The notes beneath the pieces were generated by a model, which worked only from the letters and a program-made list of their open reading frames with translations, ran no database searches and was not told the origin of the DNA. A stretch of DNA of 63,551 bases, the filler included, from Bigelowiella natans CCMP2755 (taxonomy: Eukaryota > Protista > Cercozoa), in the NCBI GenBank assembly GCA_000320545.1. It is 5 parts of 5 records of this genome, joined end to end, with 100 filler letters (N's around TTAATTAATTAA, not from the genome) between each part and the next. Parts side by side here need not be neighbours in the genome. Positions count along the whole stretch, not along the records: positions 1 to 15,519 come from ADNK01003489.1; 4 more parts are not named here. One strand, written 5' to 3'. Below are positions 5,343 to 15,481 of this stretch, in pieces. A program made the translations under genes and the position numbers. Each line of letters starts with the position of its first letter. The first letter of the stretch is position 1.

Positions 5343-8095
5343 ATGGTGCCCGGAGAAGAATGCTCCTCCCCCTCGACTACCGAATACAACGGTTCTTTGC
5401 ACCGGGCTAAAATGACAGCTAGCGAAAGCGAGAGAGGAGAAAAAGGAAAATTCTACAATAAGTACAATGAGAAACACCGTAAGATTGAGGTGGACAAAAA
5501 GCAGCAGCAGCCCCTCAAGAAGCGTTCTAGCCGCATACCTATCACGCTTAGCCAAAGTAGCAGCAGCGACGGTGGCAGCATTCTATCTGAGACCCGAGAC
5601 TCCAAACGGGTCACGCAAAAAACTGTTTTCTTCGGTCAGTGTTGTTCCTTATTCGTCGATTACATAGAGTAACGAAAATGATGAGTGGCCATTGCATAAC
5701 TGTGACTGCTCATCATCATATTTTGTAAATGATGACGGCTCATTCCATCACTGTTCATCACCATGTTTTGTACGCAAAACTATTACAGTTCGACATGCCG
5801 AAAGTTTGGAGAATGTGCATATAAGGTGATGATGGTGCCAGAGCCATAGCTATTAAATAATTAACGTACATTCTAAGGAGGAGGAGGCATAGTTGGAATT
5901 GTCGTCGTGTGATTGCTGTGGAGGAGGCATAGTTGGATTTTTCGTCGTGTGATTGCTGTGATCTTTGTGTGATACTGCTACCGCTAAAGATGACTGTAAT
6001 ATCTTCCCTTTATATCATTTTCTTCAAGATCTGCAGTAAATTGTTGGCGCAGAATCAAAAATTTCGCCATGCCAAAGGCTTCTGAAGTACGTACTCCGTA
6101 ATAAACACTACATTTTTCTAGCAACTTTTGATTGAGGAGTCAGTGTGTGAGGGGGGGAGAAGAGGTGAGGGGAAGGAGAGGGTATGGGGAGGAGGGTTGA
6201 GGGTTTCAGGAAAGAATAACGATATTATGTAGACAACCATCAAGTATTTGGTTCTATGTTCATATGAAAGAATAATACCCTATTTATCATCCTCTCTGTT
6301 ACACTCTCTGTCGTATTATTATTATGATCACGCATACACTCACACACACTCTCACACTCTCACACACGTAAAAACATGACATACACATGCACTCGATCAA
6401 CCAGTACTAAACATTGTTGTATGAATATTTTTGTGGATCATCAATTAGTTGTGAGCATCCTCTTCGGTATATTAGATATGTAGTGCCTCTCTCTCTCTCT
6501 CACTATCACTCTAAATAATCTGTTGCCTGCAAGTACCTTCCTTACGTTCCATTGCATCAGTTGTGTGCTTTGGTTAGGTTTGGGACGCGATAAAGCTGCT
6601 AAGCTTCAATAGTGATGCAGATTTGAGTGAGAATGGCCACGGTTACGCAGTTTTTTTTAGCATTTTGAGAAAAACTAATTGTGGTAACGACAACGTGCTA
6701 ATTTAGAGATGACTGCCGACATGTGTCCTATATCTTGAATATAATATAATGATGGACACCACCTTAATTCATTTTCACTATCATCAACACTGTCAATTAT
6801 AGGAACTAACATTTTGTTTTGCATCAGCAATGATAAAAGAGATGGTCGCCAAGCTAGAGAAGGATGATGCTGGTTGTACATCACCATCCAAAGAACAACA
6901 TATATGCTGTGTGATGGTGGTGCTATAACTTTGCTGCTGCTGCTGATAAATTACTTATAATAATGATGATAATAATAATAATAATAATAATAATACCTAA
7001 TATTGTAACGTTGCTGCTGCTCAGTATACTAATGCTGCTACTCTACAACAGCATCAATGTTTCTACGAGGGAAAAATGCAAAAAGAATGGAATGCACCCG
7101 CTCTAACTTTTGTTCTACAGAACAACGCTCCTCTTCCAAAACAAATACACAACCATCCCTCCTAATAGTTCATTCACCGCTCCTTCGCGCCGTGAAAACG
7201 TATCAACTTATGATAAAACCAGTTGTGCTACAATACAGAACTACAAATACTACCTACTCGGTATTAACTCATAATGGATGGGCATTGTGATGCATATGGC
7301 TTTTGATAGTAATGATAACAATAATAATAATAACAACAATAATGATAATAATAATAATATACGCAAGCTTGAGAGTAACTATTATCAGGATAATACAGAT
7401 GATAACGATGATTAAGGCGTAGTTGATAATGATGATAGTGCTGATACTAGGAGTATTTTTCTTTTTTGTTGAAAGGAGGGGAAAGATGCGAACATCATGT
7501 CGGCAATCACTCTCTCTAGTCGACGACCTGGTGCTGAGCATTTGCCCAACACGAGCACTACTCTACACGTCATATGTTCACCTCTGCTTTCCGAGCGCAC
7601 ATTTAAAGAGCACTTGATGCCAAAACCCTTCGAGTACGTTTCAAATGTAACGATGATTGCAATAGTAGCCAACGCAGTAGCGAGGATAGAAGTAAGATTA
7701 TATCCTTCCTTAGCGTTTTGATTATACAAATTATATTAACGAATTATCATTAGAAAGCGAGTATTCGAATTCGAAAAATGGCTAGATTCTCGTCACGAAG
7801 CAAATATCGTGCTCATCGGACACAGTAAATTCTTCAGACGCTTGCTCGGTAAATATCTGCCAAGAACTCTTCTTCTCTCTATTACTTTATGTTTACATCA
7901 TTGTGTTGGTGGTTTGTATATTTTAAATCTGGCAACCTTCTTGGCTATGAAGGTAATGCCTGCTCCTCACCCAAATTTGGAAATTGCGACATTTGGGAAT
8001 TCACCCGCATATATGGCATTGGAGAGCGTGCTATGTGGAAAGAAGTGGGACGCAGGTCATTATCATTCATCTTGATGGTTGCATGTATCACATAG
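5343..8095 (+). CDS. Histidine phosphatase (phosphoglycerate mutase-like) superfamily protein, multi-exon; ends approximate
   Basis: Spliced KTVFF|VRHAES (5621-5634 joined to 5789) is the RHG/RHA motif. Also DADLSENG (~6615), LIVHSPLLRAVKT (~7160-7199), IVLIGHSKFFRRLL (~7806-7847) and FGNCDIWE (~7976). Confidence 0.78.
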
Positions 8096-8711
8096 TTCTG
8101 CATCAGAGATGCAAATTACGATGGCAAATCTCCTTGCACGTATCATTTTCAGGTATTTCTCTGGTCTCTCTATTCCATAAGGAGTCTCATTATTTGAGTC
8201 TGAATGTAATGACGGAGTAACCGGAGCTTTTGTGAAAATTGCGGCGTTTCCGTTCTCTTGCGACAAATATGTTATGGAGGTAATTCAGAGCTTTGTTCTG
8301 TCTCCATCAATGACCAAATTAATGAATATTTTGATCTTGAGGTGTTGTGTGTTGCTGTACTGCAACAATTTTAATACGGAAAAGAATTCCCAAGGTGTGC
8401 GCAATGGGCGGCTTATCATGTAAGAACAACTGCATGTGATGTTACAAAGTTACGTGAGCATGAATTCATTCGATCTGTCTAGCGATGCGTCTTCTAGGGG
8501 CATCTGCTGCTGCGCTAGTTTGTAGCCTACCAGGGCTATGTAGCGTACGCACGTACGAACATGTGTAGTTTCTAATCTATTATTATTTTTACCAACACAT
8601 GCTAGCATGTTCTATTCTAATGACATGCATTGTCAAAGCACACGTGTTGCAAAGCACATTGGCATGTGTCCCAGAGAACATGTGTTTTAAACCGCGGATG
8701 CGCTTCATAGC

Positions 8712-9773
8712 CCATGCACTAGTGCTGACGCGCTAGCACACAGCAACGTGATTGACGACGACATTCAATTCGTGGCAAGACATCTGTCTAGCCATGCCTG
8801 CAGTGCAACACATTGCATGGCATCCAGACAACAGACATTGCAATGCAATGCATCTTGCATGCATTGTGTCGCTTTGTGCATGATGCATCTTGCACGTGTT
8901 GCATTGCTTTGTCCACGATTCAGCACGAGCTAGCGAGAATGCGTGCATTGCTGCGTGCATTGCCATGCGACATGCATTGCACGCATGGCAGACTGGCAGA
9001 GCTGTGTGCGCGTGCGAGCGCGCGCAAATCATGGAGATGTGTGGATGGTTCACAAAGACACATCTGGACATGCTGGACTTGCACAACGCACGCATGTGAT
9101 GCTGCTGGCGCCAACGTGGGCCATCGTTGTCTGTCTAGCTGTGTTCTAGCTGCAATCTGTCTCTGACATTGCAGACACACACACACACCCAGACATGCAC
9201 TCCTACGTTCCTGGTTTCATTGTCTTTGGTGCCTGATCTTTGCCAACTTTGGGATTGTGACTTCTCTGGTTCTCTTTGCTTTCTTCACCCCGAACTAGCG
9301 AAGTCCTCCCATCATGGCTTTGCCATTCTTGGAGTTTGCCAAGCAAGAACGCCGTGCCTTCAAACCCCAAGCGAACAATCCCATGGACCACACCTTCATG
9401 GTCCACTTGGACACTCGAGCTTCACGCCAACCACAACATCCCTGGCTTTTGCGGAGACATTGCCCCTGCTGGATGGCACAAAGTTGGAGGAGGACACGCT
9501 CATCCTGACGGGATTCATCCGGGATGAGTCTTGGACACAGTTCCGAACATCCTTCGTGAACAATGAACAACGGACAATGATGAAAAACCACGTTTCCAAA
9601 GTGTGGAAACTGACAAGACACTTGCAATGTGCGAAATGCAGTGCCTTGAACTGGCTTCAGTGAGGAGGACTGACAGCGTTGATTTCAGCCCTGAACTGAT
9701 GACTCATTTGGAGCCGGGCCGACAAAAAAAGTGCAGAAATTGGCTGCATCTGTTCATTTTTTTGTCGTCGTGG
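8712..9773. repeat. Degenerate dispersed repeat/relic, TpA-depleted patch 1
   Basis: No TA dinucleotide between 9297 and 9774. A ~50-nt segment (9556-9606) is similar to the reverse complement of 23281-23332. Confidence 0.6.
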
Positions 9774-9847
9774 TAAATTTGCCTCAATTTTGGCAAAAAA
9801 GGAACCATCTCATCATGTCACTGGGAAGAATCGGCTATAAACTAAAA

Positions 9848-11303
9848 ATGGCTACCGGCTCTGCAGTTCCAACCACTAGATCAGACAGCGAGAAAAATCA
9901 AGGATCCGCAGAATCTAAATCTAATTCACCAGAATCTAGGGCGCTTACTCTTGCTAAGAAAGATGGGTCAGTAACTAGGGTTTTTGCAGACGAAAGTTAA
10001 AATTATGCGCGACATCACTGCGCTCAACTACGTATCCATCTAACTTGCAGGTTCAAGTGTGCTATATGCATGGAACCGTATGTAAGTGCAGTATCTACAA
10101 GTTGCGGACACACATTTTGCAGGTAAAATTTAAGTTTTTTAATACGGTGAAAGTTGATGTTGGTTCTGATGATCCTCTTTGTTTGGTCGTTCGTCGTCGT
10201 ACATTACCATTAAAGGTACTGCATCGCAATTGTCGTTCAACAAGAGGCTACACGAAAATCTCTATCAACTGAGAAGCCCCTGGAGACTCAGTTCCCAAGA
10301 TGCCCAATGTGCCGAAAAGAAATACAAGGCAATATATGCGGAAATCCAGAAATTGACAATGCAATGGTACGCATGCACTATATCATTGCGATTGTGAATG
10401 TGCATTCTTAGTTACCTGTATGCTACTCTACTGCTATTGATCACAAAGAAAACTGGTCAAATATGGGGTACTAAGGCAAAGATTTACTGTGGTGTCTGCT
10501 CCGTTGTTTTCGACAACGACAGCGAGAAGGATCTGGTGTGTAATGCAAGAGGAAATCTAACCTTATCCTGAAAGATTTAATCATAAAAAAATGACGGCCG
10601 GCTTGTTTGTTATCAAATTATTCCGACAAAGCAGACAGAATCAGAAAAGTTCCAGATGGTAGTAAATGAAGATGGGTCCTTTGTGAGTGACATTTCTTGG
10701 AAAGAAAATTCAACAGTGACGAGGTAGCAAATCGAGTTTAGTTTGAGCACTATCCATTTTTGTTATGATCTAATCTCTTCTTGTCTACTTTCTTGTGCAG
10801 GATTAACGGTACATGGGATGAGAAGACCGAGAACATACAGGCAAAAGCGTTCACAACCACTTGGTACCGAGATACTATGTGCGAGCGTCATCCATTGTAA
10901 CTCGAGACTACTACTATTTGATACCACTATAACAGGCATTCAGATGTCAATTCTCAATGGGCACGATATAGGTACTACTATGCTGCTGCTGGAATAGTAA
11001 AAGAATGATGGTTAGCGTCAAGATCCTCGATTCGAATAAATATAATCTACCTAAACCAATTTTACTCAAATGCGATTGGAAATCTTAGGCCACAGCACGT
11101 GAAAGGGATATTTCCATCTATGAAAATACGGTAGTAGGATAGGATAATGATTACTATTTGATTATCCATATTAAATGGGATCACAGAAGAACCTAGAATT
11201 TGATAAATTTCATGATTTCAGTGAAACAGAAAGCAAGATTGTGCCTTACGAAGTTTGGACAGGTGATACCTTTAAAATAACGTAGCAATGGTTTTAACTT
11301 CGG

Positions 11304-14236: not shown

Positions 14237-14334
14237 GAAGGGTTGTTATAATTATCTTAAACCACCACCAATCGATATAAAGGGCTGTGATATTATTACT
14301 TGGTAAGTAGCTGTCGAAATATGCATCGAGTGTT

Positions 14335-14720
14335 GAGGACATGATGGTCTGAGGGATAGATCATATAATAAACACAGAGTCATGATGTATGAGGACATGA
14401 TGGTCTGAGGGATAGATCATATAATAAACACAAAGTCATGATGTATGAGGACATGATGGTCTGAGGAATAGATCATATAATAACACAGAGTCATGATGTA
14501 TGAGGACATGATGGTCTGAGGGATAGATCATATAATAAACACAAAGTCATGATGTATGAGGACATGATGGTCTGAGGGATAGATCATATAATAACACAGA
14601 GTCATGATGTATGAGGACATGATGGTCTGAGGAATAGATCATATAATAAACACAAAGTCATGATGTATGAGGACATGATGGTCTGAGGGATGGATCATAT
14701 AATAAACACAAAGTCATGAT
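14335..14720. repeat. Minisatellite, 7 copies of a 55-56 bp unit
   Basis: Unit GAGGACATGATGGTCTGAGGGATAGATCATATAATAAACACA(G/A)AGTCATGATGTAT repeated head-to-tail with no spacers. Confidence 0.95.
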
Positions 14721-15352: not shown

Positions 15353-15481
15353 GTTAGTTAGTTAGTTGTTCTGTTCGCGTCCTTGACTTCCCAGCTGTGT
15401 TGTTACACCGAAGTGATTTTCACAGGTGCAACAACATAGCTGGGAAGTCAAGGGCGCGAACAGAATGACTAACTAACTAAC
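15353..15481 (+). repeat. Inverted repeat: 57-bp arms, 15-nt loop
   Basis: 15353-15409 is the reverse complement of 15425-15481 with 5 transition differences. Confidence 0.9.

What the first reader, a model, noticed from the sequence alone, without database searches (positions are those of the whole stretch)
8712..9773. Candidate TpA-specific hypermutation system (TA>TG/CA, a 'reverse RIP'): patch 1
Seen: about 477 nt (9297-9774) contain no TA at all, in DNA of mixed composition where roughly 1 dinucleotide in 16 would be TA, and flanks are TA-rich. TG and CA are abundant (TGCA/CATG runs) and CpG persists. Motifs seen elsewhere as CATCTAGACATGCTAG (~20620) appear here as CATCTGGACATGCTGG (9061). 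Known: 5mC deamination removes CG, and fungal RIP creates TA from CA; neither removes TA. TadA-family deaminases prefer a 5' T/U. Inference: a regional process converts the A of TpA to G on either strand (DNA adenine deamination or a mutagenic adenine modification), probably aimed at repeats as genome defence.
Basis: partly seen in the sequence, partly recalled or inferred. Interest (0 to 1): 0.92.

Follow-up and report, generated by a model that had tools for sequence, protein, structure and literature searches.

The report
Known TpA hypermutation scar in Bigelowiella
This stretch of the alga Bigelowiella natans genome has lost nearly every TA pair because a recently described defence-like process mutates TA to TG or CA in repeats and foreign DNA; the process is already reported, but this locus adds clues about which TA sites it spares.

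Summary
The TA-free patch is real: 8 TA in 8712-9773 against 63 expected, and none in 9297-9774. The genome is Bigelowiella natans (91.4 Mb, 3,736 contigs). The patch covers a 470-nt piece of an unclassified dispersed repeat, and all 26 loci examined lie in TA-poor domains (median 1.7 kb). Direction is TA>TG/CA: 393 of 627 double differences between copies are CA/TG. A TA-free copia element keeps 0 of 110 outgroup TA and 0 of 19 conserved tyrosines, while arginines and CpG persist. Not in that text, and found here: (1) CTAG resists (7 of 8 surviving TA here; 43% in depleted domains against 2-6% elsewhere), and TAG is the least-hit context in their own mutation table; (2) a weaker ApT target (28/90 against 20/238 sites), matched by four ApT mutations in their table; (3) small non-coding repeats and adjoining DNA are edited to completion while young copia families and rDNA escape. 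The enzyme is unknown, and the lesion could sit on A or T.

The parts
8712..9773 (.). TA-poor domain (end state of TpA hypermutation); surviving TA at 8720, 8734, 8789, 8931, 9136, 9147, 9296 (all CTAG) and 9204 (CTAC)
9198..9667 (.). Partial, rearranged copy of an unclassified non-coding dispersed repeat (145 matches on about 40 contigs scored, 486 first-look candidates; 70-90% identity); no Pfam, tRNA or credible Rfam match
9297..9774 (.). 478-nt stretch with no TA at all
8712..9197 (.). TG/CA-rich left part of the domain with no match among the scored genome hits: either edited flank or a different old repeat
9668..9773 (.). TA-free right flank beyond the shared repeat, ending about 75 nt before the next gene's start codon
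8400..8711 (.). Transition zone: TA present but shifted to resistant contexts (7 CTAG among 27 TA in 8401-8800)
9848..10120 (+). Start of a neighbouring host gene (ATG 9848; RING-finger motif 10058-10120) with ordinary TA content; marks the right edge of the domain
   Evidence: motif read by pattern, not by family search

Best explanation
The patch is an old, nearly saturated product of the B. natans TpA hypermutation system. A repeat inserted between two genes (shown: dispersed copies). The region was marked as foreign or silent, probably by chromatin or small RNA rather than by copy number (inferred). A mutator then converted TpA to TpG or CpA on either strand, independently in each copy, until almost none was left (shown), across the repeat and some hundreds of bases beside it (shown as a pattern; spreading is inferred). 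Sites reading TAG on both strands (CTAG) are poor substrates and survive longest, and ApT is a weaker second substrate (shown statistically). The most likely chemistry is adenine deamination to hypoxanthine in DNA by a TadA/ADAT-type enzyme, read as G at replication (inferred; not shown here or in the preprint). Probability that the patch is a product of this published process: about 0.96; that the chemistry is adenine deamination: about 0.6.
For: All repeat loci lie in TA-poor domains. CA/TG make up 393 of 627 adjacent double differences, TA/CG only 3; 17 alignment columns hold TA, TG and CA together. TA-free copia L035: 0 Tyr in 985 aa, YVDD motif reads CVDD, no TAA on either strand, Arg kept; 0 of 19 conserved Tyr kept, 10 replaced by His or Cys codons; 0 of 110 outgroup TA kept, 47 now TG or CA. 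De novo proof in the species: 230 of 231 mutations in two viral regions are AT>GC. CTAG retention 0.58 against 0.003-0.15 for other contexts; TA kept in 46 of 217 cells with C before or G after, 1 of 232 otherwise. Two mutations 2 nt apart in one line on one strand suggest a processive enzyme.
Against: No TA-rich intact copy of this repeat was found, so its ancestral state is inferred from three-state columns. No enzyme was identified: exon-by-exon searches found six deaminase-fold hits, none seen fused to a DNA- or chromatin-binding domain, and missed even the published ADAT2 candidate. The second substrate is ApT rather than CpA, which is what I would expect from TadA-derived DNA editors (own knowledge).
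Confidence: 0.6

Rival explanations
1. Same regional process, but the damaged base is the T: oxidation or other modification of thymine next to A (5-hydroxymethyl- or 5-formyluracil type) mispairs with G and gives T>C. Because TpA is palindromic, A>G after T and T>C before A are the same event.
For: Sequence data cannot tell the strands apart; the rule reads equally well as 'T flanked by A, best in ATA, worst in CTA'. Oxidised thymines are mutagenic and mark repeats in some protists (own knowledge).
Against: Only one weak, stop-containing Tet/JBP hit below the family cut-off, though this search is insensitive in an intron-rich genome. Near-exclusive TpA specificity resembles deaminase context rules.
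Confidence: 0.17
2. An error-prone polymerase (eta- or iota-like, inserting G opposite template T) resynthesises DNA in silenced regions and leaves A>G at TpA.
For: Polymerase eta errors favour TA among WA sites and can be clustered on one strand (own knowledge); clustered same-strand pair.
Against: The WA rule predicts AA>AG too: AA is not depleted in the domains (o/e 1.0-1.4), AAA/AAC/AAG sites rarely vary (6 of 73), and no such event is among 210 de novo mutations. No indels in the hypermutable regions.
Confidence: 0.15
3. TG/CA excess comes from ordinary 5mCpG decay and the repeat was always TA-poor.
For: C5-methyltransferase genes exist; some columns hold CG, TG and CA (10-12 per alignment).
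Against: CpG o/e in the domains (0.6-0.8) equals the background and the value simulated from TA loss alone; Arg codons persist while Tyr codons vanish; unrelated elements (copia, LINE pieces, this repeat) are all TA-free; majority-G to A change at CpG is modest (8 of 49 sites).
Confidence: 0.03
4. Artefact or coding constraint (assembly error, low-complexity sequence, stop-codon avoidance).
For: The piece is rich in microsatellites.
Against: The gap is mixed sequence with no tandem array, no coding match, and recurs at 26 independent loci; TA is absent in all frames and both strands.
Confidence: 0.01

Closest known systems
TpA hypermutation of integrated viral and foreign DNA in Bigelowiella natans (Mettrop et al., bioRxiv 10.64898/2026.01.13.699255)
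   Same: Same genome, same TpA>TpG/CpA spectrum on both strands, same TpA-poor and CpA+TpG-rich signature, transposon sequences among targets, same proposed adenine-deaminase chemistry.
   Different: Their direct evidence is two large viral regions that are only partly depleted, plus coding sequences and clusters of at least 3 kb. This locus is a 1-kb saturated patch on a small non-coding repeat, below their cluster size. Their main text does not mention flanking context, CTAG survival, ApT or spreading.
Fungal repeat-induced point mutation (RIP)
   Same: Regional, dinucleotide-specific transition mutagenesis that destroys transposon genes and can extend beyond the repeat.
   Different: RIP is C>T at CpA, creates TpA and lowers GC; this removes TpA and raises GC. 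RIP is triggered by duplication; here recent multi-copy elements and rDNA are untouched and the main published target is single-copy.
TadA/ADAT2-ADAT3 adenosine deaminases able to act on DNA (amphioxus BjADAT2, cited in the preprint)
   Same: A>G outcome with a 5' T preference would follow from A-to-I deamination.
   Different: No such activity has been shown for a B. natans protein; the weaker second context seen here is ApT.
APOBEC3/AID and ADAR hypermutation
   Same: Context-specific, clustered deamination used against viruses and retroelements.
   Different: APOBEC acts on C in single-stranded DNA and ADAR on A in double-stranded RNA; here chromosomal DNA is changed at A:T pairs on both strands.

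Membership tests
B. natans TpA hypermutation (Mettrop et al. 2026) | Genome is Bigelowiella natans | tested here: met
   91,405,885 bases in 3,736 contigs equals 91.4 Mb and 3,736 contigs (PMC12730881); one NCLDV capsid gene, TA o/e 0.50
B. natans TpA hypermutation (Mettrop et al. 2026) | TpA depleted (Rho at most 0.43) with CpA and TpG enriched (at least 1.52) | tested here: met
   8712-9773: TA 0.13, TG 1.87, CA 1.72
B. natans TpA hypermutation (Mettrop et al. 2026) | Direction TpA to TpG or CpA, on both strands | tested here: met
   Three-state columns and CA/TG double differences in this repeat; outgroup polarity in a copia element of the same genome
B. natans TpA hypermutation (Mettrop et al. 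2026) | Target is foreign or mobile DNA | tested here: inconclusive
   Dispersed repeat, often beside LINE 3' ends, but its class was not established and about half of the patch matched no other copy
B. natans TpA hypermutation (Mettrop et al. 2026) | Raised de novo mutation rate, in some lines only; transcriptional silence | not testable with these tools
Fungal RIP | C>T at CpA, gain of TpA, loss of GC | tested here: not met
   TA lost, CA gained, GC 0.51 against about 0.40 in flanks
Fungal RIP | Triggered by sequence duplication as such | tested here: not met
   At least 24 near-identical copia copies (TA o/e 0.9-1.0) and rDNA units (0.77) keep TA; no TpA-biased differences among young copies
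5mCpG decay | CpG selectively lost, TG/CA derived from CG | tested here: not met
   CpG o/e at background; Arg kept, Tyr lost
TadA/ADAT DNA adenine deamination | A deaminase with shown DNA activity or a DNA/chromatin-binding fusion | tested here: inconclusive
   Six deaminase-fold exons resembling guanine, dCMP, TadA and ADAT3 enzymes, no fusion seen; search is exon by exon and missed the published ADAT2
TadA/ADAT DNA adenine deamination | Hypoxanthine intermediate in DNA | not testable with these tools
   Needs modified-base data
Polymerase eta WA signature | AA mutated as well as TA | tested here: not met
   AA not depleted and rarely variable; none among 210 de novo events

The most novel reading that the evidence does not exclude
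The B. natans mutator has a definable sequence rule (A beside T: 5' T strongly, 3' T weakly, 3' G or a C two bases upstream inhibitory), works processively, is aimed by silent chromatin rather than by foreign origin or copy number, spreads past the edges of even small non-coding repeats, and uses an enzyme or base modification that is not the tRNA-editing ADAT2.
Probability: 0.35. Interest if true: 0.75.

Novelty: already known. Interest (0 to 1): 0.45.

Why it matters
A natural, region-targeted A:T to G:C mutator in a eukaryotic chromosome is unusual and its enzyme is an open question; it would be a natural analogue of adenine base editors. The process itself is already in a 2026 preprint, so this locus is an independent confirmation. 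What it adds is testable: a substrate ranking (CTAG resistant, ATAT most sensitive, ApT secondary) against which candidate enzymes can be assayed, evidence that small repeats throughout the genome are edited to saturation up to the edge of host genes, and evidence that copy number is not the trigger. It also warns annotators: loss of TAA and TAG leaves dead elements with long open frames and no tyrosine.

Tried and rejected
Pfam on ORFs of the patch: nothing. Rfam and tRNA scans of other repeat copies: only sub-threshold hairpin matches, no tRNA head. Looking for TpA-biased differences among young copia copies: none. Deciding whether the 3' G or the upstream C protects CTAG from strand asymmetry in the alignments: unresolved. 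Looking for tyrosine-free copia proteins from other organisms among 120 homologues: none, lowest 2.1%; this small set says little about other lineages. Searches for MT-A70, MPG/AAG glycosylase, endonuclease V and Tet/JBP: no or weak hits, uninformative in an intron-rich genome. Curtis 2012 and Blanc 2015 were not held.

Full report
Observation. The gap is real. TA occurs at 9296 and next at 9774, the longest TA-free run in the piece. In 8712-9773 there are 8 TA where shuffles give 63.5 (sd 6.1, never under 42). Ratios there are TA 0.13, TG 1.87, CA 1.72, CG 0.69 at 51% GC, against TA 0.84 and CG 0.75 for the whole piece. The gap is not a tandem array and its open frames match no Pfam family.

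Organism. The assembly has 91,405,885 bases in 3,736 contigs, the figures given for Bigelowiella natans in PMC12730881 Table 1. The 18S gene looked chlorarachniophyte to me (from memory). The genome holds one NCLDV capsid gene whose surroundings have TA o/e 0.50.

Anatomy. Window 9198-9667 is a partial copy of a dispersed repeat: 145 matches among 40 scored of 486 candidates. It has internal sub-repeats and tandem duplications, no tRNA head and no credible Rfam match, and in three loci it abuts the 3' ends of different LINE-like elements. I could not classify it. Every one of the 26 distinct loci lies in a TA-poor domain, median 1.7 kb, of which about 1.0 kb is not shared with the other loci. 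TA density rises from 6 per kb inside shared sequence to 26 within 150 nt, about 34 at 150-600 nt and 54-62 beyond 1 kb. This is compatible with spreading, but also with nested old repeats that I could not annotate. In the window the domain ends about 75 nt before the ATG of a RING-finger gene (9848; motif 10058-10120).

Direction. Among repeat copies, 393 of 627 adjacent double differences are CA against TG and only 3 are TA against CG (pairs are not independent). On the L027 reference 17 columns hold TA, TG and CA together and 29 hold TG and CA with neither intermediate, against 1 for the control pair GT/AC. Where another copy keeps TA, the window copy most often has TG or CA (small numbers). 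Polarity independent of these copies comes from a TA-free copia element, L035 (TA o/e 0.01 over 3.7 kb): no tyrosine in 985 residues, CVDD at the catalytic YVDD motif, no TAA and two TAG on both strands, arginine codons intact. Of 19 positions where homologues conserve Tyr none is kept and 10 are His or Cys codons, while 14 of 24 conserved Arg are kept. Against its closest relative from another assembly, 0 of 110 TA are kept and 47 read TG or CA. CpG decay therefore does not explain the pattern; CpG o/e in the domains matches what TA loss alone produces in simulation.

What is known. Mettrop et al. (bioRxiv 10.64898/2026.01.13.699255) ran mutation-accumulation lines of B. natans and found about 1000-fold hypermutation in an integrated NCLDV and a virophage region, almost all TpA>TpG/CpA, in some lines only. 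They also report TpA-poor coding sequences enriched for transposon domains, 124 clusters of at least 3 kb, the comparison with RIP, and an ADAT2 candidate. It is the only held paper on the subject.

What this locus adds. First, CTAG survives: 7 of 8 TA in the patch, 108 of 251 (43%) in the depleted domains against 6% in their flanks and 1-6% in other DNA; per-base retention is 0.58 for CTAG, 0.05-0.15 for other contexts with G or C neighbours, and 0.003-0.04 for ATAT, ATAA and the like. At inferred ancestral TA columns, TA is kept in 46 of 217 cells with a C before or a G after and in 1 of 232 otherwise. My hand tally of the preprint's Table S2 for scaffold 10 gives edited-A contexts TAA 67, TAT 67, TAC 52, TAG 20; against counts from only 3.5 kb of that region, TAG is hit at 0.44 of the average rate (p 0.0005). 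The TAG count is lopsided between strands (3 and 17), which I cannot explain. Second, ApT is a weaker target: majority-A sites with a minority G are 28 of 90 when A is followed by T and 20 of 238 otherwise (p 1e-6), and 14 of 51 when CAT sites are left out (p 0.0005). Young TA-rich copia pairs show no such excess. The same Table S2 lists four T>C events in ATG or ATT, all ApT, although its text says all fall on TpA; two events 2 nt apart are in one line on one strand. These could be listing errors or sites already changed in the ancestor. Third, copy number is not sufficient: two young copia families and the rDNA units keep their TA. The preprint's main text does not discuss these points.

Mechanism. 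Shown: regional, two-stranded, context-dependent TpA loss in repeats. Inferred: targeting by silent chromatin or RNA, spreading, processivity. Not shown: the chemistry. Adenine deamination is the most economical (about 0.6), but since TpA is palindromic a thymine lesion gives the same record (0.17), and an error-prone polymerase is disfavoured because AA is untouched (0.15). Family searches found six deaminase-fold exons with no visible fusion, several C5-methyltransferases, and nothing firm for MT-A70, MPG, endonuclease V or Tet/JBP; these searches work exon by exon and missed the published ADAT2, so the blanks mean little.

Limits. Copies were found with a TA-poor query, so unedited copies may exist unseen.

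Verdict. Observation confirmed, interpretation supported, phenomenon already described for this genome. The context rules are modest but real additions that bear on an unidentified enzyme. Interest 0.45.

Noticed in passing
L035 (G000:C2995:13325-17053): Copia element with an open frame of over 1,100 codons and no tyrosine; dead elements here look intact because TAA and TAG are erased. Its LTR-like part (99-497) is 85-89% identical to sequence near the TA-rich L031 family, a good pair for direct polarisation that I could not fetch.
   Followed up: partly
L037:400-1000: A copia element caught midway: TA o/e 0.63 overall with a 600-nt stretch nearly TA-free.
   Followed up: no
L036, L038-L060 and L031-L034: Two young copia families with intact frames and 96-100% identical copies, not TA-depleted; one may be the 150-copy LTR element named in the preprint's Fig. 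S5.
   Followed up: partly
L023/L029:1770-3215 (-), L027:439-1305 (+), L030:966-1535 (-): TA-free 3' parts of different LINE-like elements directly beside the repeat; the usual tyrosine-containing motif after the RT domain reads with histidines.
   Followed up: partly
L073 (NCLDV capsid locus): In the capsid frame, TA at codon positions 2-3 is almost gone (4 codons) while 20 tyrosine codons remain, suggesting selection kept the protein while synonymous TA was lost, or that the free virus was already edited.
   Followed up: no
L020:511-635, 956-1084, 2423-2507: Inverted copies of a 70-125 nt sequence (up to 97% identical) around the repeat; possible terminal inverted repeats of another element.
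   Followed up: no
window 15353-15481: 57-nt inverted repeat, 91% complementary, 15-nt loop, next to a long TTG run near the contig end.
   Followed up: no
window 14334-14720: 56-nt tandem repeat, about 7 copies, 95% matches, TA retained.
   Followed up: no
window 7480-8075 (+): Probable exons of a host gene left of the patch, resembling a histidine-phosphatase family protein by eye; not tested.
   Followed up: no
L067:1-600: Another TA-poor patch close to a guanine-deaminase-like gene.
   Followed up: no
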